This document shows positions 17,844 through 61,003 of a stretch of 64,000 nt of DNA, in pieces; position 1 is the first letter of the stretch; each line of letters begins with the position of its first letter. The translations under genes were made by a program, and so were the position numbers. The notes beneath the pieces are model-generated. The model ran no database searches. It was not told where the DNA came from and worked only from the letters and a program-made list of their open reading frames with translations. Location: the IMG/VR virus record IMGVR_UViG_3300027899_000001, positions 248,001 through 312,000 of that record, one strand, 5' to 3'.

Positions 17844-18251
17844 TTAACCTCCTAAATTCATACCTCCTAAATCTGGGCCTTTTTCTGCTGCAGGTTCTGC
17901 TGGTACTGCAGCAGGTTCAGGCGATTTTTTCGCAGATTTAGGTTTTTCTGGTTCTTCTTTATCAATAAAATATTTTTTATATAAATTTATAGCAGCAGGC
18001 TCTTCAAAAATACCCTTTTTCATTCCTTCACTATAATATTTTTCATTCTCAGACAAATGTTGAAGAACAATTGTTTCAACTACTGATAAATCAGAAGAGT
18101 GTTCTTTTTCAACTTCCATTCCTACAAGAAATTCTCTTGAATCAACATCTTCAACAGTTAAACCGACTTTCTTTTGTCCTTTAAATATATCTTTATCGTT
18201 TGCTACTGATGATATAAATTCATTAAGACTTTCGTATACTAATTTTTTCAT
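17844..18251 (-). CDS. DUF5661-like protein with a capsid-targeting-like leader
   Basis: 'GMEVEKEH...I...HL.E...YY'; N-terminus MKKLVYESLNEF. Confidence 0.55.
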   Translation of the reverse strand: MKKLVYESLNEFISSVANDKDIFKGQKKVGLTVEDVDSREFLVGMEVEKEHSSDLSVVETIVLQHLSENEKYYSEGMKKGIFEEPAAINLYKKYFIDKEEPEKPKSAKKSPEPAAVPAEPAAEKGPDLGGMNLGG

Positions 18252-18263
18252 ATTATAGTTTAT

Positions 18264-18274
18264 TTTATATATTC
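18264..18274 (-). promoter_or_regulatory. Putative late promoter motif GAATATATAAA
   Basis: Exact 11-mer 13 nt upstream of the ATG at 18251. Confidence 0.5.
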
Positions 18275-18278
18275 ATAA

Positions 18279-18527
18279 TTAGGTTATAGATATAACTACT
18301 CCCCTGTCAGTAAATCTTCTTAATGCTTCAGTAACGTTTTCAATAGTAGCAGCGGGGTCATTCACTGTAATTGTTGCTTCGCTTTCTCTTGGATCTGGTC
18401 TATTACGTGGATCTGATCTATCAAATGGTTTATCAACTTGTGTAACATTTTGAAATTGTCTTTCTAGGGTGTGCGTAATTACATGAATCATTCCACGAGG
18501 GCCTTTAACTTCTACTTTAATTTCCAT
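18279..18527 (-). CDS. Hypothetical protein
   Basis: 82 aa ORF. Confidence 0.55.
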   Translation of the reverse strand: MEIKVEVKGPRGMIHVITHTLERQFQNVTQVDKPFDRSDPRNRPDPRESEATITVNDPAATIENVTEALRRFTDRGVVISIT

Positions 18528-18565
18528 AATTTTAATTTATTTTAGTTTATTTTAATATATATTCA

Positions 18566-18883
18566 TTAAATTTCATCTTCTGGTAAAATCTCTAAATCTT
18601 CTCCTTCAAGAAATGAATAAACATATTCATCTATAAATTGTTTTTGATATTCCGCAGGAGTATTATCAAGAATTGTATTTACAAGGTTATTTACGCCTTC
18701 TCTATTATAAAGTTCTTGTATTAAATAAGCAAATCCTTCATAATAAGTATCAACTTCTATATTATATCTTTTTAATTTTTCTGTAAGATATCTATTTCTA
18801 TTAAAACCTATTTTCATATCTTTAATAGGATCTGAATGTTCTTCAAATTTTTCATATAAAGATTCTTTAATAAGTTTTTTCAT
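18566..18883 (-). CDS. 'ESDPI-leader' family protein
   Basis: N-terminus MKKLIKESLYEKFEEHSDPIKDMKIG. Confidence 0.65.
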   Translation of the reverse strand: MKKLIKESLYEKFEEHSDPIKDMKIGFNRNRYLTEKLKRYNIEVDTYYEGFAYLIQELYNREGVNNLVNTILDNTPAEYQKQFIDEYVYSFLEGEDLEILPEDEI

Positions 18884-18891
18884 ATTAATAT

Positions 18892-19755
18892 TTATTTTTG
18901 ATCATCACCTTCCATAGCTCTAATTTCACGTCTATATTTCTTTTCATGTTCATATTCATACTCATGATAATCTGTAAAATACGGAGGTTTAGAAAGCTGT
19001 CTTCTATAATTTGCGCGGGGTACTATGTCTTTAAATGTAGGCGTTATAGTAAATCTTACTATTCGTGGTAATGTTACATCATCTTTTTTAAAATAATGTC
19101 TAATTAATCGCGGTTTAATTAAAATGGAAGAAAATCCCAAGTTATTAATAATATCTTTAACATATTTACCTAACTTATCAATTTCATTTTTCGGTAAGTT
19201 TTTAATTTTAGGATTATTAAACCAGAAATCTATATATCCATTACGTACATATACTGTAAAAATATAATGATTCTTATCAGCGTTTCCAAATAATTTAACT
19301 AAATCTTTGTATCTTGATTTTAATCCTATGCCCATATCATATATCGCATCATCACTTTCAATAAATTTTTCATCTATATGTTTTTGGGGTTTTATACGTT
19401 TTCCTGTATCTGGGTGTCTTTTAGGATATCCTAATTTTAATAATTTATTTCTTACACCCATATAAATATATGCAAAAGGATTACCAGTATGTCTGTTTTC
19501 CATTTTAGTATAATTCTTAGCGTATTCATCTAATATATTATAATATTTCCAATTAAATGCAGTATTTTCATCTTCAGGAAAAATGATATCATCAGGGATT
19601 TTATCTGTACCTAAAATAACAGTTAAATATTTAAAAAACCAATCTGCAGCGTCATCTTCATCTTTAAATCTACGTTTCGCATAAATTCCTATTCCTAAGT
19701 CATGAATGGGATCCGACTCTTCTATAAATTTTTCGTTAATATATTGTGCTCGCAT
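18892..19755 (-). CDS. 'ESDPI-leader' family protein, two tandem units
   Basis: N-terminal INEKFIEESDPIHDLGIG and internal IDEKFIESDDAIYDMGIG. Confidence 0.7.
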   Translation of the reverse strand: MRAQYINEKFIEESDPIHDLGIGIYAKRRFKDEDDAADWFFKYLTVILGTDKIPDDIIFPEDENTAFNWKYYNILDEYAKNYTKMENRHTGNPFAYIYMGVRNKLLKLGYPKRHPDTGKRIKPQKHIDEKFIESDDAIYDMGIGLKSRYKDLVKLFGNADKNHYIFTVYVRNGYIDFWFNNPKIKNLPKNEIDKLGKYVKDIINNLGFSSILIKPRLIRHYFKKDDVTLPRIVRFTITPTFKDIVPRANYRRQLSKPPYFTDYHEYEYEHEKKYRREIRAMEGDDQK

Positions 19756-19778
19756 TAAAGAGACTTTTATTTATATAT

Positions 19779-19928
19779 TTAATCTTCATAATATATAAAT
19801 TCACGTCCTTCATAGTTTTTTAATTTTACACAATTTCCTTCACGTCCAACGTAATAATCTGGTAACATAGGTATTTTACCACCCGGAGTATCAATAATAA
19901 ACTGAGGAACAAACCTAAATTTTTTCAT
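19779..19928 (-). pseudogene. Stranded 3' end of kamA, present as its own 49-aa ORF
   Basis: Hand-translated MKKFRFVPQFIIDTPGGKIPMLPDYYVGREGNCVKLKNYEGREFIYYED*; matches the canonical KamA C-terminal pattern (VP.F.ID.PGG.KIP..P.Y...L.NYEG). Confidence 0.8.
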
Positions 19929-19939
19929 GAATATATAAA
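19929..19939 (+). promoter_or_regulatory. Putative late promoter motif GAATATATAAA
   Basis: Exact 11-mer 8 nt upstream of the endonuclease ATG at 19947. Confidence 0.5.
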
Positions 19940-19946
19940 ATAAAAA

Positions 19947-20966
19947 ATGAAAGAATTCAAAAAAGAAAAGAATTTATTTATATGTGAAGAATGCCAACGC
20001 ACATTTGTTAAAATCGATGGGTTAAGTAAACATATAAGACTTAATCACTATTCTCAAAAAACATATTATGATAAATGGCTAAAAGAAAATGATGAAAATA
20101 CTTGTAAAATTTGTAAAAAAGAAACAACATTTATAGGATTAGGAAAAGGTTATAAAAATTGTTGTTCATCTGACTGCACTAAAAAATTTAGAACACATAA
20201 AATTCAAGCAACTTTATTACTTAGATATGGTGTAAATTCTCCTACTAAAGATAAAACTATTAGAGAAAAAGTAAATAAAACGATGATAAAAAAATATGGG
20301 CATAAATGCCCTATGAAAAATGAAAAAATACAAAAAGAAATAAAACAAAATAATTTAAAAAAATTGGAAGTAGAATATCCATTTCAGTCTTTAAAAATTC
20401 AAGAAAAAATAATTATATCTAATTTAGAAAATTTCGGAGTAAAAAATACGTTTCAACGAATAGATGTAAAAAATAAAATAAAAGAAACTTGTATGCAAAG
20501 ATATGGAGTTGAAAATCCAAATAATAATAAAAAAGTTAGAGATAAAATAGAAAAAACTTGTATAGATAAATATGGAGTTAAAAATCCATCACAGAATAAA
20601 GAAGTGCATGATAAACAACAAAAAAACGCGTGTTATTCAAAAAAATATAAAAATACTATTATAAACTATAGAGCATCTTATGAATATGATTTTTTAGAAA
20701 AATTTTACCCAGTATATTCTGATATAGTTAATGGCCCAACAATAAAATATCAATATAAAAATGAATCCAGATTATATTTTCCAGATTTTTACATTCCATC
20801 TTTAAATCTTATCGTTGAAATAAAAAATTCTTATCTTTTAAAAAAAGATAAAGAAAAAATAGAAGCAAAGAAAAAATATACTATTCTTAATGGGTATAAT
20901 TATTTAATAATTACTAATAAAGATTATTCTACATTTTCTTCATATCTTAAAATTTCTCCAGTATAA
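19947..20966 (+). mobile_element. Homing-endonuclease-like protein (C2H2 finger, YGV.NP repeats, C-terminal PD-(D/E)xK nuclease)
   Basis: 'FICEECQR...HIRLNH'; repeated 'YGVxNP'; 'YFPDFYIPSLNLIVEIK'. Confidence 0.7.
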
Positions 20967-22099
20967 CTTTTAAATTCATATACATGATCTTTATGCGATA
21001 TAATGTTATCACAGACTTCAATTTTTCCTAAATGAGAATCTACAATAAATGTTGGACACGCGTAACCACTCGTCCAGCCTCTCAATGCTGAGATAATCTG
21101 AAGTCCTTTATTAATAGTAGTTCTAAAATGACTTGTACCTGCAACAAGATCGCATGCATATATATAATATGGTCTAACTCTAATTGTAAGAAGACTATTC
21201 ATAAGCTTTTTCATAATTTGTGGGTCATCGTTAACGCCTTTGAGTAATACTGTTTGAGAACCTAAAGGAATTCCTGCATTCGCAAGCTTTTCACACGCTT
21301 GTTTAACTTCTGAAGTTATTTCATCGGGATGAGAGAAATGAATACTTATGAATAAAGGATGATATTTCTTTAAGATATTAGTTAACTCTGGCGTAATTCT
21401 TTGAGGTAACACAACAGGAACTTTAGTTCCAATTCTTAAGAACTCAACGTGTTTTATTTCTTTAATTTCTTTAAGAAGATATTCTATACTATCGTCATTC
21501 ATAGTTAAAGGATCTCCTCCAGATAATAACACATCTCGTATCTCAGTATGTTCTCTAATATACTGAAGCGCCTTTTCCCACGCTTTCTTAGGAATTCGTT
21601 CTCTATTTATGAGTCTACTTCTTGTACAGTATCGACAATTTGAAGAACAAAAGTCCGTGGTTAGAAATAATACACGATCTGGATATCTATGAACTATACA
21701 TTCCACAGGACTTTGATGTTCTTCGTTCAGCGAGTCGTTTTTCTCATTTTCAGTTACGTGAAGTTCGTTATTGGTTGGAATAACGCACTTTCCGATTCCT
21801 TCTGAAAGAGAAGTGATTGTACTTGCATAATATGGAGTAATTCTTAATGGTAAATTTATATTCTTGGATAATTCATAATTTGAATCTCCAAATATACGAC
21901 TCAATTCTTCATATGTAGTTATACTGTTACGTATCTGCCAATGCCAATCATTCCAATTAGTATCAGATACATCTGAATAAAATCTATTTTTAAAAGATTG
22001 AGTTTTTTCGGAGATGATAAGAGGGGGTTCTTCAGTATCAACGATAATCTCCTGAGCTGGTTGATACTGGTTTTTAGACGAATCTATTTGTTGTTCCAT
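20924..22099 (-). CDS. kamA: KamA-family radical SAM lysine 2,3-aminomutase
   Basis: 'WNDWHWQIRN', 'VHRYPDRVLF...CSSNCRYCTR', 'LLSGGDPL', PLP-Lys 'LLKGVND', 'VRPYY'. Confidence 0.85.
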   Translation of the reverse strand: MEQQIDSSKNQYQPAQEIIVDTEEPPLIISEKTQSFKNRFYSDVSDTNWNDWHWQIRNSITTYEELSRIFGDSNYELSKNINLPLRITPYYASTITSLSEGIGKCVIPTNNELHVTENEKNDSLNEEHQSPVECIVHRYPDRVLFLTTDFCSSNCRYCTRSRLINRERIPKKAWEKALQYIREHTEIRDVLLSGGDPLTMNDDSIEYLLKEIKEIKHVEFLRIGTKVPVVLPQRITPELTNILKKYHPLFISIHFSHPDEITSEVKQACEKLANAGIPLGSQTVLLKGVNDDPQIMKKLMNSLLTIRVRPYYIYACDLVAGTSHFRTTINKGLQIISALRGWTSGYACPTFIVDSHLGKIEVCDNIISHKDHVYEFKSYTGEILRYEENVE

Positions 22100-22179
22100 T
22101 TTGTAGTAAAAAATTTTACTTTTATATTCGTATTTTTAGTTTAGTTTTGTTCTATATATCAAAATTTTTGGGATAAAAA

Positions 22180-22255
22180 GATGGCGTGAACCTGGATCCC
22201 ACCCTGTACCTACGAAGATGATTTTCGTTGTTCTGACATTAAACTACACGCCATC
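22180..22255 (-). ncRNA. tRNA-like element (degenerate T-arm, UCA at the anticodon position)
   Basis: 9-bp closing stem GATGGCGTG/CACGCCATC; D-arm TA-GTTT-AATGTCA-GAAC-A; perfect ACGAA/TTCGT stem with 7-nt loop AATCATC; no GTTCRA T-loop. Confidence 0.45.
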
Positions 22256-22291
22256 CGGATTATGGTTAAATTTAGGGCCCAGCTAACCATC

Positions 22292-22636
22292 TTATTCTGG
22301 TAAGGTCATTTTAAAAAACTCGAAAATGGGATTAACATTTTGTTTAGAATGCATCGAAATGTCATCTAAGGTCCGTAGAGATATCGCGTTCTCTAAAGTA
22401 ATAGAACCATATTCTATCCAAAGACCTATAGAATCTACTTCATCTGGTGCACTGGTTAAAAGATCATCGAAAATACTCGTGACAATTTGTTCAGTCAATG
22501 CTTCGTTTAGTATATAGTTTTCAGGAATTTCAAATTTAGCAGATATTTTTTTAAGGTATTCTGCTTTGCCTTCTTCTATATCAGTATCTCTTTTCATCAA
22601 AGAGATTGATATACTTTTAATTAAGTTTAAATCCAT
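22292..22636 (-). CDS. Hypothetical protein
   Basis: 114 aa ORF. Confidence 0.55.
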   Translation of the reverse strand: MDLNLIKSISISLMKRDTDIEEGKAEYLKKISAKFEIPENYILNEALTEQIVTSIFDDLLTSAPDEVDSIGLWIEYGSITLENAISLRTLDDISMHSKQNVNPIFEFFKMTLPE

Positions 22637-22659
22637 AAACTAATTTTTTTATTATATAT

Positions 22660-22992
22660 TTATGTTTGTCTAATTCTAAATCCTCTTCGTTGTAACATTT
22701 TTTGTAACATCTCAGAATCAAACCAGGGGTTTTCTCCTTTTATTTTACAATATTCATTAATAAACATTTGTATATCATGATGATATTTTTCATTTATATA
22801 ATAAGTATTAGATTTAATTATATCGTTAGGTATTGTAGGAGTTTTTAAAATTTGAGGTAATATTTTTATTATATATTGAAACATTCGTACATCATCAGGA
22901 AAATTTTTCTTGGTGTGAGTTATTCCAATACCCATATCATAAATGGGATCAGATTCTTCTACAAATTTTTCAAATACATATTGCGCTTTCAA
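22660..22992 (-). CDS. 'ESDPI-leader' family protein
   Basis: MKAQYVFEKFVEESDPIYDMGIG (TTG start); its payload resembles unit 1 of 18892-19755. Confidence 0.7.
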   Translation of the reverse strand: MKAQYVFEKFVEESDPIYDMGIGITHTKKNFPDDVRMFQYIIKILPQILKTPTIPNDIIKSNTYYINEKYHHDIQMFINEYCKIKGENPWFDSEMLQKMLQRRGFRIRQT

Positions 22993-23007
22993 ATTTAATT
23001 TATTTTA

Positions 23008-23018
23008 TTTATATATTC
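23008..23018 (-). promoter_or_regulatory. Putative late promoter motif GAATATATAAA
   Basis: Exact 11-mer 16 nt upstream of the start at 22992. Confidence 0.5.
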
Positions 23019-23126
23019 AAAACTCTACATTAATATATAATAAAAGAGGTGAGGCTCTGACAAGCCAATTGGTAGTTTGGATAACCAACTGTCCCCCTTT
23101 AATTATATATTAGTCTAAAATAAAGT

Positions 23127-23816
23127 TTGGAAATCATGAATCATCAAAAAGTCTATGAATCTATAATTCAGAGAGCAAAATCTGAAAATAGAATTAAACT
23201 TAATAGAAATAATGAAAATTATATTTATTATGAAAATCATCATATTTTGCCCAAATGCTTAGGTGGAAATAATGATAAAGATAATTTGGTTTTATTAACA
23301 GCAAAGGAACATTATGTCTGTCATAAATTACTTACATATATTTATAAAGAAAACGCAAAAATATACGGTGCTTTTTTCTATATGTCATTTAATAAAAAAT
23401 ATGACAAATTTTTATCAGCTCGAGATTATGCTTACGCAATAGAATTAAATACTATCGCACATATTAATAAAAAACAATCGTTAGAAACAAAAGAAAAAAG
23501 AAGAAAATCAATGTTAGGTAAAAACAAAGGAAAAAAAATGAAAAAAGAATTTGGCGAAAACATTTCTAAACGTTTAAAAGGAAACATTCCTTGGAATAAA
23601 GGAAAACCCGGGTGTTTTTCAAATGATACTATTAATAAAATGTCAATAGCTGCAATAGGAGTAAAAAATTCATTAGAATCAAATGAAAAAAATAGGCAAT
23701 CTCATATAGGAAAAACTACATGGAATAAAGGATTAACAAAAGAAATTGATGAACGGGTTTTAAAATGTTCACTTAAAATTTCTAAAACTCTTAAAAATAA
23801 AAATTTATTAAATTAA
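23127..23816 (+). mobile_element. Free-standing HNH homing endonuclease
   Basis: 'YYENHHILPKCLGGNNDKDNLVLLTAKEHYVCHKLL'; paralog of 9287-9934; 'PWNKG' repeats. Confidence 0.8.
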
Positions 23817-24517
23817 GACTGGCCCGGACCCTTTATAGCAATTCCGCTAATTGCAGGGTTGGATCTATCATTAGGTTGCGAAAATTGTTTTACCCTATTC
23901 GCATCAGTTATATCGGCAGCATTTTGCTGAAGACCTATACTCTCTTCAACTTCTCCTTTGGCTGCTACTGCTTTACCATCTGTAACTTTATTAAGTTCTT
24001 CTGGAGCCATTGTTCCAAATCCTGAACGTTCTTCCCAATAATCTTTTCCATAATCAATTGTAAGTTGTTCTCCAGCTTTTATAGTTCTTGCTGCGATAAA
24101 ATACATTTGACGATTATCTTTATTATAAGCAAATGTGATATTTGGTTGAGGTGAATGCCCATATAAACTGCCATATCCAAGCACAATACCGTATTGCATT
24201 TTATTTTTATCGATTTCAAAAATATAATCTTTTAATCTTGGAACTGCTTTTGCTTCAAGACCCACAAAAATAATAGGCGCAATTTCAACTATTTCTCCTT
24301 TAGCATATTGTGTTTTAGCTAACACAAGATATCCTCCATTCTTTTTCTTAGAATATTCTACACGATTAACATTGAACACTTCTTTACGCGCTGTCAAGAA
24401 ACCCCCTTTATCAGCAATATGTGAAGGTTTTACTACGATATCTGTTTTTTCAAACGGATTGTAAAATTCTTCATCTAGTTTAGCAAATTGATCAAATGTT
24501 TTAATTTTATATTTCAT
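23813..24517 (-). CDS. SET-domain protein methyltransferase
   Basis: 'KNGGYLVLAK...KGEIVE', 'GSLYGHSPQPN' (NHS-like), 'AARTIKAGEQLTIDYG'. Confidence 0.8.
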   Translation of the reverse strand: MKYKIKTFDQFAKLDEEFYNPFEKTDIVVKPSHIADKGGFLTARKEVFNVNRVEYSKKKNGGYLVLAKTQYAKGEIVEIAPIIFVGLEAKAVPRLKDYIFEIDKNKMQYGIVLGYGSLYGHSPQPNITFAYNKDNRQMYFIAARTIKAGEQLTIDYGKDYWEERSGFGTMAPEELNKVTDGKAVAAKGEVEESIGLQQNAADITDANRVKQFSQPNDRSNPAISGIAIKGPGQS

Positions 24518-24538
24518 GATTGAATTAATTTTTTATAT

Positions 24539-25264
24539 TTATTCATCTGATATATTTCTTTCTTTCAACTTATGATAATATTGAGCAAATTTATGAGCTA
24601 ATATTTTTTTAACTTTAGGAGTTAAAAAAGTATTCCATAGTTCATAATGTACACCGAATATCTTTTTAAATTCATTATATAGATTATTGATGTTTTTAAT
24701 ATGCCCATTTTCATCAAAAAAATCTAATTTACTAATGGTTTCTAAGAAAAAAGAATGTATTTCTTCAGTACTATTATAATAACGACGATTAAACTGATCT
24801 CCTGAAAGTCCAGGCGCTTGATACGATTTTTTTAAGGGCATATTAGAATTTTTTCCTTTACTACGATACCAATTATATGCATGACTTAATTCATGTAGTA
24901 TTCTTTCATATTTATTTCCATGAATTATTATTAAGCCCTTTGAAAATTGTAATTCATTTAAAAGTCCATATTTTTTTAATTGAGCATTAGTTCTATTAAA
25001 AGCAGTGGGCGGTAAAAAGCTACCAGAAAATTCAAAATTAGGAAAATATAATCTAATTGCTACATCTTGTATCATTTTATACGTATCACTTTTTTCTATG
25101 TCTACTAAATCTTTTATAAAATATGTTTCATTTGATTTAATTTCTTTATTTTCAGTTTTACGTAAAATTATTTGCGCTAATTTTTTTAAGTCAATATAAC
25201 TATCATATGTTTCATTTAAAACAGAATATTTTTTATATAAATCGTAAGAGATAAAATTGTTCAT
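24539..25264 (-). CDS. Putative zincin-like metallopeptidase (HExxH)
   Basis: 'ILHELSHAY' with a downstream 'YYNSTEEI' Glu; leader ends in VLNE. Confidence 0.45.
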   Translation of the reverse strand: MNNFISYDLYKKYSVLNETYDSYIDLKKLAQIILRKTENKEIKSNETYFIKDLVDIEKSDTYKMIQDVAIRLYFPNFEFSGSFLPPTAFNRTNAQLKKYGLLNELQFSKGLIIIHGNKYERILHELSHAYNWYRSKGKNSNMPLKKSYQAPGLSGDQFNRRYYNSTEEIHSFFLETISKLDFFDENGHIKNINNLYNEFKKIFGVHYELWNTFLTPKVKKILAHKFAQYYHKLKERNISDE

Positions 25265-25281
25265 ATCTATTTTTATATGAA

Positions 25282-25893
25282 TTATGGCTTATATTGTATT
25301 GGCTTTGATTTATTAGTATCATCTTTATAATCTGAAAATGATTGAAATGTTTGTGATTTATATTTTGGCATCTTTCCTTTATTTGTTACAAAGATTTTTT
25401 TGAATTCATTAAAACTCATTGTTCCTACTGCCATGCGTTTAATTTGATTTATAAATTGAGAAATATGATTAGGATGAAGCAACATTGCTGTAAACTTTTT
25501 ACTTAATTCATTTTCCGTACCTGCATATCTTTTATATTCATATTCAGGAAGAGCCATTTTTCTAATGTATGTTCTTACTCCATTCAATAAAGATTCATAG
25601 TATTTTTTTGCTAATAAGTATTTTTCAATATAATCAGCAGCTTCGTAATAAAAATCAATATTATGTTCAACTTTATCAATTTCAGACTTAGGATAATTTC
25701 CTTCTAATTCACGAATGTTAATTTTATTTAACAAACTATTTAAACGATCAATATCGTCTAATGTTCTGCTTATAATAGTATCTTTTTGAATTTCAGAAAC
25801 TTGATTTGATTCAAATTGATCAAATACATCAGAAATACTTTTATATAAATATTTTGATTGTTTATAAAATTCTACTGTACTCTTTAAACTCAT
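25282..25893 (-). CDS. Hypothetical protein
   Basis: 203 aa ORF. Confidence 0.6.
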   Translation of the reverse strand: MSLKSTVEFYKQSKYLYKSISDVFDQFESNQVSEIQKDTIISRTLDDIDRLNSLLNKINIRELEGNYPKSEIDKVEHNIDFYYEAADYIEKYLLAKKYYESLLNGVRTYIRKMALPEYEYKRYAGTENELSKKFTAMLLHPNHISQFINQIKRMAVGTMSFNEFKKIFVTNKGKMPKYKSQTFQSFSDYKDDTNKSKPIQYKP

Positions 25894-25909
25894 TATTAAA
25901 ATTATTTTA

Positions 25910-26899
25910 TTATGCTAATTTACCTGTTTGTTCACCTTCTACTTTAGTTTCATCTGTGAGAGGCCCTTCAAATGATTTAGCATATTTAATATCGCATTGA
26001 TTGTTTTCTTTTTCTCCAACTATCTTATATGTTATTAATTTATCATCAACACTAACTATTACTACTTCTTTTTCTCCTATGCCTTTAATATTAATTTTAT
26101 ATTTTTTTCCAACTTCAAGTTTAGGAGTTTGTTTTTCTGTTTGTGCTTCTTCTTGATCTTTTTGTATTTTAGCCTTTTGTTCTTCTGTTTGTGTAGTAGT
26201 TTCTTGAATTTTCTCATCGTTGTATCTATTAGCATAAGAACTTTCATCATAAAGTTTGTAGGCTTCTTCATTAGTCAATACTTTTCTTGCATCAGCTTCA
26301 ATAGTTTTTGAAATGTATGAATATGCATTCATTTGAATTTGTGTATGTAATAATTGCCAATAATTTTTTAATTTAAGAGCAGCAGCATCTTTTCCACCTT
26401 TAAAAAATGCAGCTGTTGCATCTAATATTCCTGTTATAGTTGATGATGTTTCTGCATTACTAATTTTTTTATCAAAAGCAGCATCTGCATTAGATAAAAA
26501 TTTATCTACTGCGCCATAAATAGCATCTAATTGTCTTTTTTGTAAATTCGATGTCGTTTTAATTTTATTATTTAAAATTTTCTTTAATTCTTCGCCTTTT
26601 TTATTTTCTTTAATAGCTTCTGCTAAAGCAGTAGTTACACTTCTTTCTAATTTTAATACATTAGGAAGATATTTATTTATTATTTTTTCTGTTACTTGGT
26701 CTTGAGTTCTTTTTGCAGTTTTATTTAAAGTTCTTTTAATTCTACCCCATTTTGTAAAAAGGTTTCCTTTTTCTGTTTCGACATCTTCAGGTTTTCCTGC
26801 AATTGTTTCATTGGCTTCATTTAAACCCAATTCTTTAAATAAACTATTTCCATTTATATCAACAACTTCAGAAAGTTGTAAGTATTCACTATATTTCAT
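25910..26899 (-). CDS. Hypothetical helical protein with a capsid-targeting-like leader
   Basis: MKYSEYLQLSE...GLNE; 329 aa. Confidence 0.6.
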   Translation of the reverse strand: MKYSEYLQLSEVVDINGNSLFKELGLNEANETIAGKPEDVETEKGNLFTKWGRIKRTLNKTAKRTQDQVTEKIINKYLPNVLKLERSVTTALAEAIKENKKGEELKKILNNKIKTTSNLQKRQLDAIYGAVDKFLSNADAAFDKKISNAETSSTITGILDATAAFFKGGKDAAALKLKNYWQLLHTQIQMNAYSYISKTIEADARKVLTNEEAYKLYDESSYANRYNDEKIQETTTQTEEQKAKIQKDQEEAQTEKQTPKLEVGKKYKINIKGIGEKEVVIVSVDDKLITYKIVGEKENNQCDIKYAKSFEGPLTDETKVEGEQTGKLA

Positions 26900-26946
26900 A
26901 ATCTTCTTACTTTTATTTTTATATATATTCTAGTACAAAAAGCTTT

Positions 26947-26957
26947 GAATATATAAA
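26947..26957 (+). promoter_or_regulatory. Putative late promoter motif GAATATATAAA (divergent pair with the variant at ~26918-26930)
   Basis: Exact 11-mer 17 nt upstream of the ATG at 26974. Confidence 0.5.
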
Positions 26958-26973
26958 ATAAAATATTACTACT

Positions 26974-28281
26974 ATGAAACATGTATATGAATCTTTAAAA
27001 GAATTTAATGATTATAAATTCTTCAAACTTTTAGAAGAAAAAGAAGAACCTGGTACTGATAAGCAAAATCTACAATCTAAAGAAAAAGATGGTTTAGCTA
27101 TTATAGATAAGGTCATAAAGAATTTTGATGACTTTAAAAAAGATGCTAAAGGTGAAATTCTTAAGTATAAAGAATTCTGGGAAGAAAATCAGCAAACTAA
27201 AAAGGCATTTTCTAATGGAGATGTCTATAAAATGTATGATGGTAATTACGTTGTAGGTGTTCTTGAATTACCAGTAGAAACATTATCTGATGGTAGTATA
27301 GAAGGTGGATTAGGAGCAACAGATGAACCAGTAGAAGAGATTATTGAAGGCAAAGAATTAATGGAAGCTACAAAAGAAGAAGACGATTTAGGTCTTGATC
27401 TTGGTTTAACAGATGAACCCATAACAGAACCTAATACTAGTCCTGCTCCAAATGAAGTTCCAGCAGATCCTAATACACAAGAATTAGAAGAGCCTGCTCC
27501 TGATCAATCGGGAAATTCAGGATTAACTGATCAATCTCCAGTAGAAGAACCTCCAATGGATCAAGCACCAGTTGAAGAACCTTCGCCAGATCTTACAGCG
27601 CCCCAAACATATTTAGTAGTATATGACATGTCAGGTGATGATAAAGAAGAAATTTTTAGATGTGGTTCTAATAATGTAGTTCAAGGATTTCAAGCATTCT
27701 ATAATGACACTTTTAAAGGATCAATGAAAAATGCTATATTACAATATAAGAAACAAAAAGAACAAGAAAAAGCTGAAGCTGAAAAAACAGAGAAGAAAAA
27801 AGTTCAAGCTGAAAAACAAACTAAAGTTCAAAAATTCTTAGGTGAAGCTCTTGAAGAAGATATGCCAGAAGATGATGAAATGCAGTCTTGGCTTGATGAA
27901 GTAAGAGATTATCTTATATCTGAATATGAAATTGAAGAAGATGTAGTAGATGATTTCTTAGAATTAGCTTCTGAACAATTAGCTGATTTATTTGATGGAG
28001 GATCAAGTGCATTTGATGCAGCTGGAACAGTTGCTACAGATGAAGATATTTTATCAGAACTTGATAAAGATGATGAAGACGAAGATGATATTGACATAGA
28101 AGATGAAGATGAATTAGATGATGAAGATCTTGAGGATCTTGGTGAAGAAGAAGATGAAGAAGAATATCCTGAAGATGAAGATGATGAAGAAGATGATGAC
28201 GATACACATGAAGAAGAATTAGGAAAAATAATTGGAAGAGATACAATGAGACGTCCATTACGTTTATCAGATGAAGATTAA
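26974..28281 (+). CDS. Highly acidic low-complexity protein
   Basis: 435 aa; Pro/Glu-rich middle, D/E-saturated C-terminus; leader MKHVYESLKEF. Confidence 0.7.
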   Translation: MKHVYESLKEFNDYKFFKLLEEKEEPGTDKQNLQSKEKDGLAIIDKVIKNFDDFKKDAKGEILKYKEFWEENQQTKKAFSNGDVYKMYDGNYVVGVLELPVETLSDGSIEGGLGATDEPVEEIIEGKELMEATKEEDDLGLDLGLTDEPITEPNTSPAPNEVPADPNTQELEEPAPDQSGNSGLTDQSPVEEPPMDQAPVEEPSPDLTAPQTYLVVYDMSGDDKEEIFRCGSNNVVQGFQAFYNDTFKGSMKNAILQYKKQKEQEKAEAEKTEKKKVQAEKQTKVQKFLGEALEEDMPEDDEMQSWLDEVRDYLISEYEIEEDVVDDFLELASEQLADLFDGGSSAFDAAGTVATDEDILSELDKDDEDEDDIDIEDEDELDDEDLEDLGEEEDEEEYPEDEDDEEDDDDTHEEELGKIIGRDTMRRPLRLSDED

Positions 28282-46910: not shown

Positions 46911-46916
46911 TTAAAA

Positions 46917-56802: not shown

Positions 56803-58575
56803 TTAAATAACTGAACCACTATTAGTTTCAAACCAAAGTGTAATATATTGAGTTTCTGGGTGGAAACCTGCGTCAACTAAAGCGTATCTAGTTTTGATGA
56901 TAACTTTAGGAGCACCTGTACCTTCAGTAATAAGCTTAACGCTTTCAGCCATAAGGTATGGGCAGAATACTGTTCCTGGTTCATCAATAGCACCTTTTCT
57001 TCCTACAAGTACTCTGGTATCAGAATAAAGCATGTTAGGATCTACATAAAGAGTCATTCCAGCGATTGTTCCGAGAGGATACAATGAACCGTTAGATTGA
57101 GTAAATGTATTGGTTATAGGTGAGAATGTGTAACCAGCATTTGTTTGAAGAGCTGTAGCAATTTTAAGGTTAGTAACAATAAAGTTAGCAGGACCTCTTC
57201 TTCCTCTTTGCATGATAACGTTACCAGCTGCAAGAATATTAGCCATAACTCTTTTGATAATTGTGTCTTGGTTTTCAAATGTTGCACCAACTACTGATGT
57301 ATATTTTGCGAATCCTGGAACAGTCATTGCTCCTGTAGTAACAGAACCAGCATCATTATATGCAAATGCAGTTGAATTAAGAGAACCTGTAGATGTACAG
57401 TTCATGTTAAGGTTAATACCTTCAACAGCGTTAGCTTTGATATGGTTTTTCCAACCGTGACCGAACAATCTTGAAAGAATGTGTTTGTTAATAGCTTGGC
57501 TAATTTCGTTGATTCCAGCATTTTCTACCATTGCGATAACATCAATACCCCATTGTTTATTAAGATCTTGAATTTGTTCCTGAGTAACAGAAACTGATAC
57601 TTGGAATGTGCCTACTTGTACAAATTTAGTAAATACCTGAAGACCAAGAGCTCTTGGATATTCCATTTCACCAACGCCTCTTTCCATAGGTTCATAAAGA
57701 GTAGTGCCTGAGACGAATGTTCCTCCCCAGTCAGCATTATCTGTTTGACCTGCACCGGTAAATCCTTGTACTTGATCTTCCAATGTGGAAATAAGTGTAG
57801 GATAAGTAGTAACATTATAAAGTAATGATTGATTTAATAGAGGAGCGACGTTTCCTGTACCATTGAAAATATCAGCCAAATTATCACCTGCTGTTCCAAA
57901 TGTTCCAGTTTTAAACATTGGGAAACCATCAATTCTTGATTTTCCAATATAAGTAGCTGTTAATGTAGAAGCACCTGTAGATACGTTTGTTGCTGAGTTA
58001 AATATTAAAGATGTTCCATTAGTAATTGTTCCTGCTGTAATAAGAGCTTGAACAGATGCATCAAGTTGAATTTTGAATGCATGAGGAGCATCGTATTGAC
58101 CATAAGCAGCAGAACCTTGGAAAGTAGCAGGATTTGCTGTTGCAGGACTAACTGCTGGTTGTGCGCCAAATGGTTGTTTTCCTCCAGCGTATACATAATC
58201 TAAATAGGATACAACTCCTGTTGGACCTGGCATAGGAACCACGTTAACAAGGTCAAAACCTATTGTTCTAGCGGCTACTTGAAGAGCCATAGGAAGAAGT
58301 GCAGGCCATTTGTCACCTGAACCTTTAACAGTTGTACCTGTAAATTGAGCTCCTGTAGTAGCTGCAACTGATGCAGGAACTGCAGTACCAACACCTGGTA
58401 CGTTGTAAAGAGTTGCATAAGGAACGGATACACCACCCATAGCAGCTTCATTTAATGCATGAAAATGTGCGTATTTAGAAATCCAACTCAATCTGTTTTT
58501 ATCTTTAAGACCAGTTACAGTTTCAATCATTGGAGACCATTTTTGCACAATTTGTTGTTCGTTTAATTGTTTCAT
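56803..58575 (-). CDS. gp23: Major capsid protein, T4 gp23-like
   Basis: 'KWSPMIE', 'DLVNV.PM.GPTG', 'EQIQDL...GID', 'NEI...IN', 'GTIAG', 'TRYAL'; downstream of the protease/scaffold gene. Confidence 0.9.
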   Translation of the reverse strand: MKQLNEQQIVQKWSPMIETVTGLKDKNRLSWISKYAHFHALNEAAMGGVSVPYATLYNVPGVGTAVPASVAATTGAQFTGTTVKGSGDKWPALLPMALQVAARTIGFDLVNVVPMPGPTGVVSYLDYVYAGGKQPFGAQPAVSPATANPATFQGSAAYGQYDAPHAFKIQLDASVQALITAGTITNGTSLIFNSATNVSTGASTLTATYIGKSRIDGFPMFKTGTFGTAGDNLADIFNGTGNVAPLLNQSLLYNVTTYPTLISTLEDQVQGFTGAGQTDNADWGGTFVSGTTLYEPMERGVGEMEYPRALGLQVFTKFVQVGTFQVSVSVTQEQIQDLNKQWGIDVIAMVENAGINEISQAINKHILSRLFGHGWKNHIKANAVEGINLNMNCTSTGSLNSTAFAYNDAGSVTTGAMTVPGFAKYTSVVGATFENQDTIIKRVMANILAAGNVIMQRGRRGPANFIVTNLKIATALQTNAGYTFSPITNTFTQSNGSLYPLGTIAGMTLYVDPNMLYSDTRVLVGRKGAIDEPGTVFCPYLMAESVKLITEGTGAPKVIIKTRYALVDAGFHPETQYITLWFETNSGSVI

Positions 58576-58657: not shown

Positions 58658-61003
58658 TTAGTTATTATAACGATTTTTCATATAATCACCAATGGACGCA
58701 ACATAAGTATCTAATTTTTGTTCACTTTCTTCTGGAGTTTTTGCGATGACAGACTCATTAAGAGTAAGATTAGGTTTAGTAATTAATCCGCTAGTTTCCC
58801 AGAAATTTTCGATCTGATACTGTGTATTCAATGTAAAGTATTCAGCTTTTGCATTAATCGTTTCTCTAATTACTTCTGAAGAGTTATAAAGATCTTTATA
58901 AGCTTTAGGAGCTAATGCTAACCATAAAGGTTCATTAGTTTGATTTTTTGCAACTGCATTTTCCCATAATTGCATAATTACTTTAGAATCAGTTGTTGGA
59001 ACTTTTGAAATTTCGTTTGCTACTTTTTCTTTATCAGTTGCGTCTAGACCAGCAAATCTTTTTCTATCAGTTTCACTTAAAAGCTGAGTGAATGGATATT
59101 GCTCTTTTACACTTTCATCTAATCCTTTTTCTTTTTCTAAAGATTGAATAATTGCTTCAAGTTTACTATCAAGATTTGTTTTTCTAGCTTGAATATCAGA
59201 AGTTTGATTTAAGCTTTCGTTTGTTAATCCTTTTCCGCCAGGTTTAACATTTAATTTAAGATTTTGTGCACTAGTATAGTTCTTTTTAGGACCATCACCA
59301 GATACACTTTCTTTTCCTTTTCCTATAGTTTTAACAACTTTAAGATCAGTTTTAAGATCTTTTGGATCATTGCAACAACCCCCATCTTTTGGAAGTGATG
59401 CACCTGCTTTAGAAGGATTCATTTGTAATTTATCGTTTCCAACAGGCATTTTTTCTTTACCAACTTTAACGTTTCTTAATTTTGCTGTAATAATTTTACC
59501 ATCAAATTCTACGCTAGTGTTTTTCTGATGTGCGGTATCAACTTTCACATTGCCAGCTTTCTTAAGAGTATCTGCTGTAATAACTGATATTCCTTTAAGA
59601 TTTGCTTCGTTAAGTGGTTTTGCTGTAATTGAATGTGTTTTTAGCATTTCGTCGATTTTTGATTTTAGTTCTGGACTTTTCTTTGATTCTGAAACTAATT
59701 CAACGTATTCAATAAGTTTCATGGCATCTTCTTTACTTATAGCTCTGCCAAACATATCTTCTGTCCAGTTTACAGAATGATTAAGATTTTTAGCAATGGA
59801 TGAAGTCCATTCATGCATGCCGTTAATAGCTTGGGCTTTTTCTGTACCCCATTCGTTAAGTGCATTAACACCTTTTGCGATTTGAGTTGTCCACTCATTA
59901 AGACCATCAAGCATTTCTGCGTTATGATCTACAGTTTCTCCAATTGCATTTGTGACCTTTGCTACTTCTGCAGTCCAGTCTTGGGTTGCATTTAGAGTTT
60001 TAGCATTATGATCTACAGTATCTGCAATCTTCTTAGTTAGTTTATAGTGATTATTGCTCTTTTCTGCTAATGTATCAGCATAAGTAGCGAGTTCATTTAC
60101 AGCTTTAGCGATTTCGGATTGCCAATTTAATGAATCTTCTTGGATTTTACGTATTTTTTCAACATATTTTTCCAATTTTCCTGATTTATCAGGAGAGTCA
60201 TTTGAATTTTCTAGTTTTTCCTTAATGGCGCCAAGCTCTTGATTGAATAATTCGGTCCATTTCTGGATAGCTTCTTCATTCATCATTGGTTTTGTTTCTG
60301 CCATTTGATTTTCGTGATTATTTTTAATTAATTGTTTTGCTTCTTCACGTAGTGGAACTGATGGATATTTATCAGTAACATCAATAATAGAGATGTCTTC
60401 ATTTAAAATACCGAGCTTAGAATTGATACTATGATCTTTACGTGTTGAAGAGGATTCGTTAAGTTGTTTTACTAATTCATTAATATAGGCTTGTTTTGGA
60501 TTGGCACCTTCATTAACTTTGTGAAGCTGTGCAGACTCGAAACCTGGTTTGGCAACCAAGTCATATGTGTAAATCTGCTGTATAGCTACTGTTTTGTCTT
60601 CGTTAACCGTACCAGCGGCTCTTGAAGAGATTGAAAGTGGAACTCCTGCTTCTAATAATGATTTAGCAATTTGCCCCTTCGGTGTTTCGAGTACTTCAAT
60701 ACGACCTAAAACTTGACGTTTTTGTTGATCATACCACAACTCAGATATTCTATGAGATACACCACCTAATGCAACTTCAAATCTTTCAGGATGATCTAAT
60801 TCACCAAGAAGGTTACCATTAGTAATGTCTTTCTTCAAATATTCTAAGTGGGGTAAATACTCTTTTTCTTCGTAAATACGACCATTTCTATTTTCAACTC
60901 CAAACTCAGCAAAAACACCTTCTAACATAGTCTTACCGTTTTTGGTAATTTTCTGTAGGTTTTGAGATGATCTTTCAAGGATCAAAAGTGATTTTTCTGC
61001 CAT
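58658..61003 (-). CDS. gp21: Prohead protease (gp21-like) fused to a coiled-coil scaffold
   Basis: 'LEGVF....N.NGRIY', 'LGELDHP', 'VSHRI', 'TPKG.I...L..G..L.ISSRAAG', 'TYD.VA.PG' in the first ~190 aa, followed by a long helical repeat region. Confidence 0.85.
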   Translation of the reverse strand: MAEKSLLILERSSQNLQKITKNGKTMLEGVFAEFGVENRNGRIYEEKEYLPHLEYLKKDITNGNLLGELDHPERFEVALGGVSHRISELWYDQQKRQVLGRIEVLETPKGQIAKSLLEAGVPLSISSRAAGTVNEDKTVAIQQIYTYDLVAKPGFESAQLHKVNEGANPKQAYINELVKQLNESSSTRKDHSINSKLGILNEDISIIDVTDKYPSVPLREEAKQLIKNNHENQMAETKPMMNEEAIQKWTELFNQELGAIKEKLENSNDSPDKSGKLEKYVEKIRKIQEDSLNWQSEIAKAVNELATYADTLAEKSNNHYKLTKKIADTVDHNAKTLNATQDWTAEVAKVTNAIGETVDHNAEMLDGLNEWTTQIAKGVNALNEWGTEKAQAINGMHEWTSSIAKNLNHSVNWTEDMFGRAISKEDAMKLIEYVELVSESKKSPELKSKIDEMLKTHSITAKPLNEANLKGISVITADTLKKAGNVKVDTAHQKNTSVEFDGKIITAKLRNVKVGKEKMPVGNDKLQMNPSKAGASLPKDGGCCNDPKDLKTDLKVVKTIGKGKESVSGDGPKKNYTSAQNLKLNVKPGGKGLTNESLNQTSDIQARKTNLDSKLEAIIQSLEKEKGLDESVKEQYPFTQLLSETDRKRFAGLDATDKEKVANEISKVPTTDSKVIMQLWENAVAKNQTNEPLWLALAPKAYKDLYNSSEVIRETINAKAEYFTLNTQYQIENFWETSGLITKPNLTLNESVIAKTPEESEQKLDTYVASIGDYMKNRYNN

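What the first reader, a model, noticed from the sequence alone, without database searches (positions are those of the whole stretch)
17844..28281. Cluster of proteins with capsid-targeting-like leaders ending in (L/I)xE
Seen: MKKLVYESLNE (17844), MKKLIKESLYE (18566), MRAQYINE, MKYKIKTFDQFAKLDE (SET), MNNFISYDLYKKYSVLNE (HExxH), MKYSEYLQLSE (25910), MKHVYESLKE (26974); the MCP itself has MKQLNE and HALNE. Established: T4 internal proteins carry a ~10-aa capsid-targeting sequence removed by gp21 after Glu. Inference: this 10-kb block encodes the head-packaged, injected cargo.
Basis: partly seen in the sequence, partly recalled or inferred. Interest (0 to 1): 0.6.

Follow-up and report, generated by a model that had tools for sequence, protein, structure and literature searches.

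The report
Conserved leader tag on 61 phage genes
A 405-kb freshwater phage puts the same short, floppy peptide, which looks like phage T4's "pack me into the head and cut here" signal, in front of 88 small protein-binding modules, so it may load and inject an unusually large set of proteins, though this remains unproven.

Summary
The generic "(L/I)xE within 20 residues" is common, found in 24% of other ORFs, and the 10-kb block is not special.

The real signal is a ~25-residue tag: MK(L/I)V(R/K)E(H/Y)-(I/L/V)NE-KFxEESDPIxD(M/L)GIG. It occurs 88 times in 61 genes, about 10% of the proteome of this 405-kb, T4-headed, Lak-related phage. It also appears in 1,673 metagenomic protein clusters, and no Pfam model matched the tag in any protein scanned.

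The tag is conserved at protein level and predicted disordered. It precedes unrelated domains (ankyrin, LRR-like, a small new fold) and recurs inside multi-module proteins.

Four points favour a T4-type capsid-targeting and cleavage signal:
- The first ten residues match the T4 signal at positions 4, 6, 8 and 10.
- (L/I)NE is rare overall but enriched in the protease-scaffold fusion and the capsid protein.
- A small capsid-arm mimic carries the leader exactly where the capsid protein has its predicted cut site.
- The genes use the same late promoter as the portal and a tail-fibre gene.

Three points count against it:
- The best-conserved half lies after the predicted cut.
- Two near relatives lack the tag.
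- There is no proteomic evidence.

Verdict: interpretation partly supported (about 0.45). This is a new variant of a known kind.

The parts
17844..18251 (-). DUF5661 protein (135 aa) with the short leader MKKLVYESLNE, lacking the SDPI...GIG half of the tag. A late-type promoter motif lies 21 nt upstream (window 18259-18272).
   Evidence: PF18905, 33.1 bits against a cut-off of 27; the family is seen only in viruses.
18566..18883 (-). Tag-family gene (105 aa) with a divergent tag: MKKLIKESLYEKFEEHSDPIKDMKIG.
   Evidence: G000 266764-266880, E = 4e-14.
18892..19755 (-). Tag-family gene (287 aa) with two modules. One tag is at the N-terminus and one starts near residue 120. Module 1 is of the small 'IPDDII' type. 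A late-type promoter lies 23 nt upstream.
22660..22992 (-). Tag-family gene (110 aa, TTG start) of the 'IPDDII' type. The model is confident (pLDDT above 90) except for tag residues 6-21 (below 50). A late-type promoter lies 24 nt upstream.
   Evidence: no fold match in the PDB.
23813..24517 (-). SET-domain protein with a ~16-residue leader ending in LDE. Orthologues in two related contigs have VNE and INE at the same place.
24539..25264 (-). HExxH protein (241 aa) with VLNE at residues 15-18. The VLNE-TY junction is kept in the one orthologue seen.
25910..26899 (-). 329-aa protein of unknown function with LSE at residues 9-11 and LNE at 25-27. It is the first gene of the operon that ends with SET, and its promoter differs from the late motif at one position.
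26974..28281 (+). 435-aa, very acidic protein with the short leader MKHVYESLKE. A late promoter lies at 26949-26962. An orthologue with the same leader type exists in the tag-less relative G001.
56803..58575 (-). Major capsid protein (590 aa, T4 gp23 family). LNE at residues 4-6 and 41-43. The predicted maturation cut is after Glu43 (HALNE | AAMGG).
   Evidence: (3 [LI]NE against 0.14 expected, p = 4.5e-4).
58658..61003 (-). Prohead protease (S77/gp21 family, residues ~1-170) fused to a long scaffold-like region (781 aa in all). Seven [LI]NE sites. ILE at residues 8-10 is conserved in all relatives examined.
   Evidence: 7 against 0.92 expected, p = 1.5e-4.
61694..62515 (-). Tag-family gene (273 aa) with two modules. 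Module 2 (61697-62140) is an LRR-like solenoid (pLDDT 90) whose tag is predicted disordered. The same module is a stand-alone gene in related phages.
62515..62871 (-). Tag-family gene (118 aa). A late-type promoter, one mismatch from the motif, lies upstream.

Best explanation
The block samples a genome-wide system. This phage has a T4-type head, with a gp23-like capsid protein and a gp21-like prohead protease fused to its scaffold.

About 10% of its proteome consists of small modules that each begin with one conserved, disordered peptide. The modules are ankyrin repeats, LRR-like solenoids, a small new fold and many unclassified domains.

Proposed mechanism (inferred, not shown):
1. The genes are transcribed late, together with the virion genes.
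2. The N-terminal part of the tag, MK(L/I)V(R/K)E(H/Y)(I/L)NE, acts like the T4 capsid-targeting sequence and brings the protein into the scaffold core of the prohead.
3. The prohead protease cuts after the Glu of (I/L/V)NE, the same motif it is predicted to use in the capsid protein and in its own scaffold.
4. Tags inside multi-module proteins are cut in the same way, so these proteins behave as polyproteins.
5. The freed modules stay in the head and enter the host with the DNA, as a large and fast-changing set of protein binders, probably directed at host defences in the way T4 IPI* is.

The second half of the tag, KFxEESDPIxD(M/L)GIG, is unexplained. It may be the real docking determinant, or it may be removed by a further cut.

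The genes at 17844 and 26974 carry only the older, short form of the leader. The SET and HExxH genes carry looser versions of it.
For: Shown by tools:
- The tag occurs 88 times in the phage's own genome. It is found in 122 places in IMG/VR contigs and in 1,673 cluster representatives, with up to 10 copies in one protein. None was found in 185,579 prokaryote genomes.
- Conservation is at protein level. 35% of identical-residue codon pairs differ synonymously, and codon use roughly follows the genome, with departures at a few positions.
- The tag is predicted disordered (pLDDT below 50) next to confidently folded domains in two different folds. The downstream domains are unrelated to one another.
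- In 28 of the 53 N-terminal copies the start Met lies exactly 9 residues before the invariant Glu. This gives V4, E6, H/Y7, I/L8, E10. The T4 signal is MKTYQEFIAE (PMC8442874), in which residues 4 and 7 target and residues 8 and 10 direct processing (PMC9026906). T4 gp24 begins MAKINELLRE.
- [LI]NE is rare, at 0.0011 per residue. It is most enriched in the protease-scaffold protein (7 against 0.92 expected, p = 1.5e-4) and enriched in the capsid protein (3 against 0.14, p = 4.5e-4). L-x-E at capsid residue 41-43 is kept in Lak phages, LR756500 and G001.
- A small protein copies capsid residues 60-90 (22 of 31 identical, E = 6e-11). It starts with the leader MKAKSINE or MKARTVSE directly in front of that copy. 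In the alignment the leader's Glu falls on the Glu of the capsid protein's HALNE site.
- 39 of the 61 family genes lie in operons headed by the motif ATATATAAAWWAAA and 7 by a variant of it; none is headed by an early promoter. The same motif precedes the portal and a tail-fibre gene. Early, Bacteroidota-like promoters precede the ligase and topoisomerase genes.
- Modules that are internal in this phage are stand-alone genes starting at the tag in relatives.

From the literature: T-even internal proteins are a diverse set of anti-defence proteins that share only the targeting sequence (PMC3012670).
Against: - The invariant and best-conserved residues (F+2, D+7, P+8, G+15) lie after the presumed cut and have no counterpart in the T4 signal.
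- The 29 internal copies show that the tag does not need a free N-terminus.
- Two large relatives whose protease domain is 75-78% identical have no tag. One of them, G001, has no trace of the SDPI/GIG motif and almost no homologues of the cargo domains.
- No tag gene lies near the protease gene in any relative, so the adjacency seen in this window is not conserved.
- The family is not basic like the T4 internal proteins: median pI 7.7 against 6.8 for other proteins.
- 88 packaged modules would be without precedent.
- The capsid cut site is predicted from the motif, not mapped. A MAFFT alignment puts the T4 gp23 site about 17 residues further downstream.
- No virion proteome, no RNA data and no cultured host exist for this phage.
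Confidence: 0.45

Rival explanations
1. The tag is a docking peptide for a common partner that has nothing to do with the capsid, either a phage hub protein or a host machine such as a protease or chaperone. The ankyrin and LRR modules would then be interchangeable substrate receptors working inside the infected cell, much as poxvirus ankyrin proteins use one shared motif to reach a host ligase. Nothing would be packaged.
For: - The motif is conserved and disordered and sits on many unrelated binding domains.
- Internal copies are as conserved as N-terminal ones.
- The most conserved part is not the cleavage-like part.
- Relatives with a very similar protease lack the tag.
Against: - Late-type promoters are shared with the portal and tail-fibre genes.
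- N-terminal copies have a fixed Met-to-Glu spacing of 9 or 7 residues and an extra conserved leader that internal copies lack.
- (L/I)NE is enriched in head proteins.
- The capsid-arm mimic carries the leader at the cut-site position.
- No candidate partner was identified.
Confidence: 0.25
2. The tag anchors the modules to the outside of the virion, on the capsid surface, head fibres or tail appendages. The particle would then display many LRR and ankyrin binders for adhesion, and there would be no proteolysis.
For: - Expression is late-type.
- LRR-like folds are common in adhesins.
- One family protein copies a capsid N-arm segment.
Against: - Ankyrin repeats are typically intracellular binders.
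- No known decoration-protein fold or anchor domain is present.
- The 25-residue acidic peptide resembles the propeptide logic of T4.
- Multi-module chains of up to 10 units are hard to fit on a lattice.
Confidence: 0.12
3. The tag has no targeting role. It is the inherited N-terminal or linker segment of one much-duplicated gene family, kept for folding, solubility or translation reasons.
For: - The family grew by tandem duplication, giving gene arrays and multi-module ORFs.
- MK-rich N-termini are common in this AT-rich genome.
Against: - The downstream domains are not homologous to one another, yet the tag is nearly invariant.
- The tag is modelled as disordered, not as part of any fold.
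- Synonymous sites vary freely while the residues are fixed.
- Conservation holds across 1,673 clusters at 50% identity.
Confidence: 0.08
4. One reading: window 17844-28281 is a dedicated cassette of head-packaged cargo, recognisable by any (L/I)xE leader.
For: - The block is syntenic in a related contig.
- Most of its operons have late-type promoters.
- The SET and HExxH leaders keep a hydrophobic-N/D-E motif in orthologues.
Against: - The background rate of the motif is 24%.
- The block also holds two homing endonucleases, a radical SAM enzyme and untagged ORFs.
- 56 of the 61 tagged genes lie outside it.
Confidence: 0.05

Closest known systems
Capsid-targeting sequence (CTS) of phage T4 internal proteins IPI-III, Alt and gp24, cut by prohead protease gp21
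   Same: - A short N-terminal peptide is shared by otherwise unrelated proteins.
- The phage has a gp21-family protease and a gp23-family capsid protein.
- The leader is 10 residues long, with a hydrophobic residue at 4, Glu at 6, I/L at 8 and Glu at 10.
- The L/I-x-E motif is also enriched in the scaffold.
- The cargo is diverse and turns over fast.
   Different: - The tag is 25 residues long, and its best-conserved 15 residues follow the presumed cut.
- It also occurs inside proteins, between modules.
- There are 88 copies in 61 genes, against a handful in T4.
- The cargo is ankyrin, LRR-like and other binding domains rather than small basic proteins.
- Cleavage and packaging have not been shown.
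Processed head and ejection proteins of giant phages phiKZ, 201phi2-1 and SPN3US
   Same: - These are large phages with many head-internal proteins, including paralogous families.
- Paralogues share identical N-termini that carry cleavage motifs ending in Glu (PMC5694885).
   Different: - Their propeptides are mostly over 100 residues long and their motif is (S/A/G)-x-E.
- No single short tag is shared by dozens of genes.
- This phage is not related to that group; its capsid protein is closest to the Lak megaphages.
Viral multigene families of ankyrin proteins that share one short adaptor motif (for example poxvirus ANK/PRANC)
   Same: Variable ankyrin binding domains are joined to one conserved short element, and the families are expanded and fast-evolving.
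   Different: - The poxvirus motif is C-terminal, folded and F-box-like, and it binds a host ligase.
- Here the motif is N-terminal or between modules, disordered and acidic, and it sits in a bacteriophage.
- No sequence similarity was tested or seen.

Membership tests
T4-type capsid-targeting sequence / internal proteins | The phage encodes a gp21-family (peptidase S77) prohead protease and a gp23-family capsid protein. | tested here: met
   Pfam Peptidase_S77 E = 2.4e-15 and Gp23 E = 1.2e-38. PHROG head maturation protease E = 6e-40.
T4-type capsid-targeting sequence / internal proteins | An N-terminal propeptide of about 10 residues ending in Glu, with L/I two residues before it. | tested here: met
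   28 of 53 N-terminal tags have Met at -9, so the Glu is residue 10. 17 have Met at -7. Position -2 is I, L or V in all 53.
T4-type capsid-targeting sequence / internal proteins | Only the leader is shared; the mature parts are unrelated to one another. | tested here: met
   Beyond the tag, BLAST clustering gives one 34-module group and otherwise mostly singletons. At least three domain types follow the tag.
T4-type capsid-targeting sequence / internal proteins | The signal acts at the N-terminus only. | tested here: not met
   29 of the 82 copies are internal and equally conserved from -2 to +15. Metagenomic proteins carry up to 10 copies.
T4-type capsid-targeting sequence / internal proteins | The leader is removed by the prohead protease after Glu. 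| not testable with these tools
   Only indirect support: [LI]NE enrichment in the scaffold and capsid proteins and the capsid-arm mimic. The complex prediction gave no verdict.
T4-type capsid-targeting sequence / internal proteins | The proteins are present in the mature head and injected with the DNA. | not testable with these tools
   The phage is uncultivated. Only its source DNA run holds it, and no RNA run does.
T4-type capsid-targeting sequence / internal proteins | The genes are expressed together with the head genes. | tested here: inconclusive
   Inferred from promoters only. 46 of 61 genes lie behind the motif, or its variant, that also precedes the portal and tail-fibre genes. No transcript data exist.
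Ankyrin repeat proteins (Pfam Ank clan) | A match to Pfam Ank models above the gathering score. | tested here: met
   8 of the 61 own-genome family proteins and 40 of 79 large metagenomic members. This applies to a subset of the family only.
Leucine-rich repeat proteins | An LRR solenoid fold or a match to an LRR profile. | tested here: inconclusive
   No Pfam LRR hit. The AF2 model has pLDDT 90, and its Foldseek hits are nearly all LRR proteins but weak (best E = 0.046, TM about 0.4).
SET-domain methyltransferases (gene 23813-24517) | A match to Pfam SET above the gathering score. | tested here: met
   45.6 bits against a cut-off of 22.4.
DUF5661 (gene 17844-18251) | A match to Pfam PF18905 above the gathering score. 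| tested here: met
   33.1 bits against a cut-off of 27. The nearest Atlas clusters are viral DUF5661.

The most novel reading that the evidence does not exclude
The phage loads its head with a repertoire of more than 80 tagged ankyrin, LRR-like and other binder modules. Many are made as polyproteins that the prohead protease cuts at each tag. The conserved KFxEESDPIxDMGIG stub stays on every mature module and serves a shared function after injection, such as docking to one host or phage factor. That would be a two-part address label and by far the largest injected protein set known for any phage.
Probability: 0.15. Interest if true: 0.9.

Novelty: new variant of a known kind. Interest (0 to 1): 0.7.

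Why it matters
- If the tag is a packaging and processing signal, huge phages can carry dozens of ready-made protein binders into the cell with their DNA. That would move the known T4 trick of injected anti-defence proteins to a different scale and add a polyprotein logic not described for phage cargo.
- The tag would also be a simple sequence handle for finding injected proteins in uncultivated phages. It already marks 1,673 protein clusters, and Pfam matched nothing in the tag region of the proteins scanned.
- It could serve as a candidate address label for loading foreign proteins into large capsids.
- If the tag instead docks to another partner, it defines a new adaptor system in phages.
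- Either way, a tenth of this phage's coding capacity is explained by one 25-residue motif.

Tried and rejected
- **Alternative genetic code.** Code 11 already gives 93% coding, and reassigning a stop adds nothing, so no other code was used.
- **Nucleotide-level repeat or regulatory RNA as the cause of the conserved gene starts.** Rejected, because synonymous codons vary much as in the rest of the genome.
- **Homologue searches.** The word-based search with the 110-aa protein found only the protein itself. tblastn against GenBank phages found nothing.
- **Tag profile in other genomes.** No hit in Lak-A2, LR756500 or Tenacibaculum phage PTm1. No hit in five large contigs with 53-78% identical protease. 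No hit in the GTDB genome contigs.
- **Complex prediction of the protease domain (215 aa) with a 45-aa tag.** Score 0.01 against a mark of 0.32. The tool's verdict is no support and no evidence against, so it is not used either way.
- **Conserved position of tag genes next to the protease gene, like T4 genes 67 and 68.** Rejected, because no tag lies within 6 kb of the protease in any of the relatives' protease loci searched.
- **Basic charge as in the T4 internal proteins.** Not seen.
- **Fold of the 'IPDDII' module.** No PDB match.
- **Literature.** A search for the motif string and for ankyrin families in huge phages found nothing relevant.
- **Expression data.** The only run holding the stretch is the probable source DNA sample and no RNA run does.
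- **Identity with the gut 'Jug' phages (PMC12880540).** Considered and left open: genome size and GC are similar, but no sequence link was made.

Full report
**What the window is.**
The window is bases 248001-312000 of a single 405,016-bp virus contig with direct terminal repeats, rated 100% complete. GC content is about 27%. The standard code gives 93% coding, and no stop reassignment improves this.

The head genes are of the T4 type.
- A 590-aa capsid protein of the gp23 family lies at 56803-58575(-).
- A 781-aa protein at 58658-61003(-) starts with a gp21/S77 prohead protease domain and continues as a long scaffold-like region.
- The nearest named relatives of the capsid protein are the Prevotella Lak megaphages (48% identity) and huge phage LR756500.

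The only public run that holds the block is a freshwater metagenome, probably the source sample, and no RNA run holds it. The early promoters look like Bacteroidota promoters, with TTTG followed by TAnnTTTG (the host inference rests on my knowledge of that consensus).

**Checking the observation.**
The criterion itself is loose.
- Among 395 ORFs outside the family, 24% have [LI]xE with its Glu at residues 5-20.
- In the block, 6 of 11 such ORFs have it (p = 0.03), and one of the six is a zinc-finger homing endonuclease.
- [LIV]NE in the first 20 residues of non-family ORFs is seen 16 times against 8.9 expected (p = 0.02).

**What is really there.**
Listing all N-termini of the genome showed dozens of ORFs starting with nearly the same 25 residues.
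- A regex finds 61 ORFs with 82 copies. A 45-position profile finds 88 copies.
- The family makes up 10.6% of all encoded residues, and 56 of the 61 genes are on the minus strand.
- The consensus, numbered from the invariant Glu as 0, is (I/L/V)-N-E-K-F-x-E-E-S-D-P-I-x-D-(M/L)-G-I-G. E0, F+2, D+7 and G+15 are invariant.
- The 53 N-terminal copies add M-K-(L/I)-V-(R/K)-E-(H/Y) or M-(K/R)-A-x-x in front. The start Met lies 9 residues (28 cases) or 7 residues (17 cases) before E0.
- The 29 internal copies are just as conserved from -2 to +15 but not further upstream.
- Block members are 18566, 18892 (two tags) and 22660. Two more lie at 61694-62871.

**Nature of the tag.**
Conservation is at protein level. 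Codon use at the tag's conserved positions roughly follows genome usage, with departures at a few positions, and 35% of identical-residue codon pairs differ at the DNA level.

Downstream of the tag, at least three unrelated kinds of domain follow:
- ankyrin repeats, hit by Pfam in 8 of the 61 own proteins and in 40 of 79 large metagenomic members;
- an LRR-like solenoid, with an AF2 pLDDT of 90 and Foldseek hits that are nearly all LRR proteins but weak;
- a ~90-residue alpha/beta domain with an 'IPDDII' motif and no PDB match.

Many modules remain unclassified. In both AF2 models the tag itself has pLDDT below 50 while the rest exceeds 90. The tag is therefore a conserved, disordered linear motif that marks the start of each module.

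**Distribution.**
- The profile finds 1,673 cluster representatives at 50% identity among 1.84 billion proteins. Many carry 3-10 tags.
- 122 places were confirmed in IMG/VR contigs.
- None was found in the GTDB prokaryote genomes, in Lak-A2, LR756500 or PTm1.
- Contigs that hold both the tag and the protease have protease domains at least 85% identical to this one.
- G006, with a 79% identical protease, has an ankyrin polyprotein of more than 1,282 aa. It carries a diverged tag...KVVKESLFEKFSEESDDLTKDLGIG..., about every 250 residues.
- G001 and G002 (75-78% identical protease, about 80% complete) have none. G001 has no SDPI/GIG motif at all and almost no homologues of the cargo domains.
- G001 does carry the short leader M-K-x-V-K-E-S-L-x-E on about ten ORFs, including the orthologue of window gene 26974.

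The short leader therefore looks ancestral, and the full tag looks like a later elaboration that then expanded.

**Evidence bearing on a T4-like targeting and cleavage role.**
1. Literature. gp21 cuts after Glu in L/I-x-E. The T4 signal is the first 10 residues, MKTYQEFIAE, in which residues 4 and 7 matter for targeting and residues 8 and 10 for processing. T-even internal proteins are diverse anti-defence proteins that share only this signal (PMC8442874, PMC9026906, PMC3012670). The main N-terminal form here, MK(L/I)V(R/K)E(H/Y)(I/L)NE, has the same length and the same pattern at positions 1, 2, 4, 6, 8 and 10. T4 gp24 begins MAKINELLRE.
2. [LI]NE is rare, with 122 occurrences outside the family. 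Among all non-family proteins it is most enriched in the protease-scaffold protein (7 sites). Composition-preserving shuffles give 7 against 0.92 expected (p = 1.5e-4) for that protein. They give 3 against 0.14 (p = 4.5e-4) for the capsid protein and 4 against 0.31 for a 181-aa late protein at genome 157439. This is what one expects of a protease's own scaffold substrates.
3. The capsid protein has L-N-E at residues 41-43, at the end of its N-terminal helical leader. L-x-E is kept there in G001, Lak and LR756500. The protease itself keeps I-L-E at residues 8-10 in all relatives, as T4 gp21 keeps LIE-9.
4. A family protein at genome 145622-146779 ends with a segment identical at 22 of 31 residues to capsid residues 60-90 (E = 6e-11). 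That part begins MKARTVSE. In a related contig it is a separate 131-aa gene that begins MKAKSINE, followed at once by the capsid-like segment and a Lys-rich tail. The alignment places the leader's Glu on the Glu of HALNE. The similarity to the capsid protein starts exactly at the predicted cut.
5. Promoters. The motif ATATATAAAWWAAA, which resembles the T4 late TATAAATA, lies 14-38 nt before 48 start codons. These include the portal gene, a tail-fibre gene, 12 family operon heads, and genes 17844 and 26974. Near-matches precede the capsid, the protease and the 25910-to-SET operon. 39 family genes lie in operons headed by this motif, 7 by a variant and none by an early promoter. The early class precedes the ligase, topoisomerase and phosphatase genes.
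6. Modules that are internal in this phage are stand-alone, tag-first genes in relatives. Such fusion and fission is neutral if every tag is cut.

**Evidence against, and gaps.**
- The most conserved half of the tag lies after the presumed cut and has no T4 counterpart. It may be the true docking element. It may also be removed by a second cut, since F-x-E and I-x-D motifs are present, but T4 gp21 does not process Asp at the cleavage position. Or it may serve another function altogether.
- Near relatives lack the tag.
- The adjacency of the two tag genes to the protease gene in this window is not conserved.
- The family is not basic.
- The capsid cut site is predicted, not mapped, and the T4 site aligns about 17 residues downstream.
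- The one complex prediction allowed gave no verdict.
- There is no proteome and no transcript evidence.

**The rest of the block.**
- Genes 17844 (DUF5661, a virus-only family) and 26974 carry the short leader and late promoters. Gene 26974 encodes a 435-aa protein with a very acidic tail like that of T4 core protein gp67.
- The SET protein's leader ends in LDE here, and in VNE and INE in two orthologues.
- The HExxH protein keeps VLNE-TY in its one orthologue.
- These four are reasonable but weaker candidates for the same route.
- The block also contains a DUF7487/TnsA-like endonuclease, an HNH-type endonuclease and a lysine-2,3-aminomutase-like radical SAM gene. It is not a cargo cassette. 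It is syntenic in a related contig.

**Verdict.**
- The best explanation (about 0.45) is a much-expanded, two-part variant of the T4 capsid-targeting and processing signal. It marks a very large, late-expressed family of binder modules and polyproteins.
- The main rival (about 0.25) is a docking motif for some other common partner.
- No Pfam model matched the tag in the proteins scanned, and I did not find it in the literature searched.

Noticed in passing
window 33670-56270 (+): A run of some 25 genes for nucleotide-sugar synthesis and transfer lies between a truncated second gp23-like gene and the capsid gene. It includes an NDP-hexose 2,3-dehydratase (39921-41234), a DegT-type aminotransferase (38134-39240), a C-methyltransferase (45615-46910) and a GDP-mannose 4,6-dehydratase (48544-49608). 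It may serve DNA or virion glycosylation.
   Followed up: partly
window 28397-30802 (+) and 15811-17022 (-): A family-25 glycosyltransferase, a homologue of the T4 DNA alpha-glucosyltransferase (Pfam AGT, E = 1.6e-11) and a C5 cytosine DNA methylase. Together they suggest modified DNA, which would fit a need for injected inhibitors of modification-dependent nucleases.
   Followed up: partly
window 30804-31730 (+): A second, short (308 aa) gp23-family protein covering only the C-terminal two thirds of the fold (Pfam Gp23, E = 1.5e-21). It may be a vertex or accessory shell protein.
   Followed up: no
G000 145622-146779 (L004:10625-11779, -) and L037:3318-3710: A small protein copies residues 60-90 of the capsid protein's N-terminal arm, directly behind a short leader, and is followed by a Lys-rich tail. 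In this phage it is fused to two tag modules. In a relative it is a stand-alone gene.
   Followed up: yes
whole genome; in the window e.g. 26949-26962 (+), 18259-18272 (-), 23003-23016 (-): There are two clear promoter classes. ATATATAAAWWAAA lies 14-38 nt before 48 starts (virion genes, tag family, many homing endonucleases). A Bacteroidota-like TTTG...TAnnTTTG precedes DNA-metabolism genes.
   Followed up: yes
window 19947-20966 (+), 23127-23816 (+), 14149-15069 (-), and about 20 more across the genome: Two large families of homing-endonuclease-like genes: one with N-termini like MNHQK-YE-II, the other zinc-finger DUF7487/TnsA-like. Many have their own late-type promoter and interrupt operons.
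   Followed up: partly
window 20924-22099 (-): A lysine-2,3-aminomutase-like radical SAM enzyme (Pfam Radical_SAM plus LAM_C) lies inside the block and is conserved next to tag genes in a related contig (L202).
   Followed up: no
G006 125500-129697 (L204:349-4197, -): An ankyrin-repeat open frame of more than 1,282 aa, running off the contig end, is built of ~250-residue units. Each unit is separated by a diverged form of the tag (SDDLTKDLGIG).
   Followed up: partly
G000 157439-157984 (L005:5442-5984, -): A 181-aa late-promoter protein has four [LI]NE sites (0.31 expected) and sits inside a cluster of tag genes. It is a candidate small prohead-core protein. It matched no PHROG family and was not scanned against Pfam.
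   Followed up: partly
G000 113534-115267 (L195:14037-15767, -): A topoisomerase/gyrase-B-like gene ends in an intein splicing-domain fragment and is followed by endonuclease-like genes. This suggests split or intein-bearing replication genes.
   Followed up: no
G000 45465-47117 (L001:16468-18117, -): An AAA-type ATPase (phrog_1297, E = 1.5e-52) has the short leader MKKLVPESIEE and a late-type promoter. It is an enzyme that may share the leader-dependent route.
   Followed up: no
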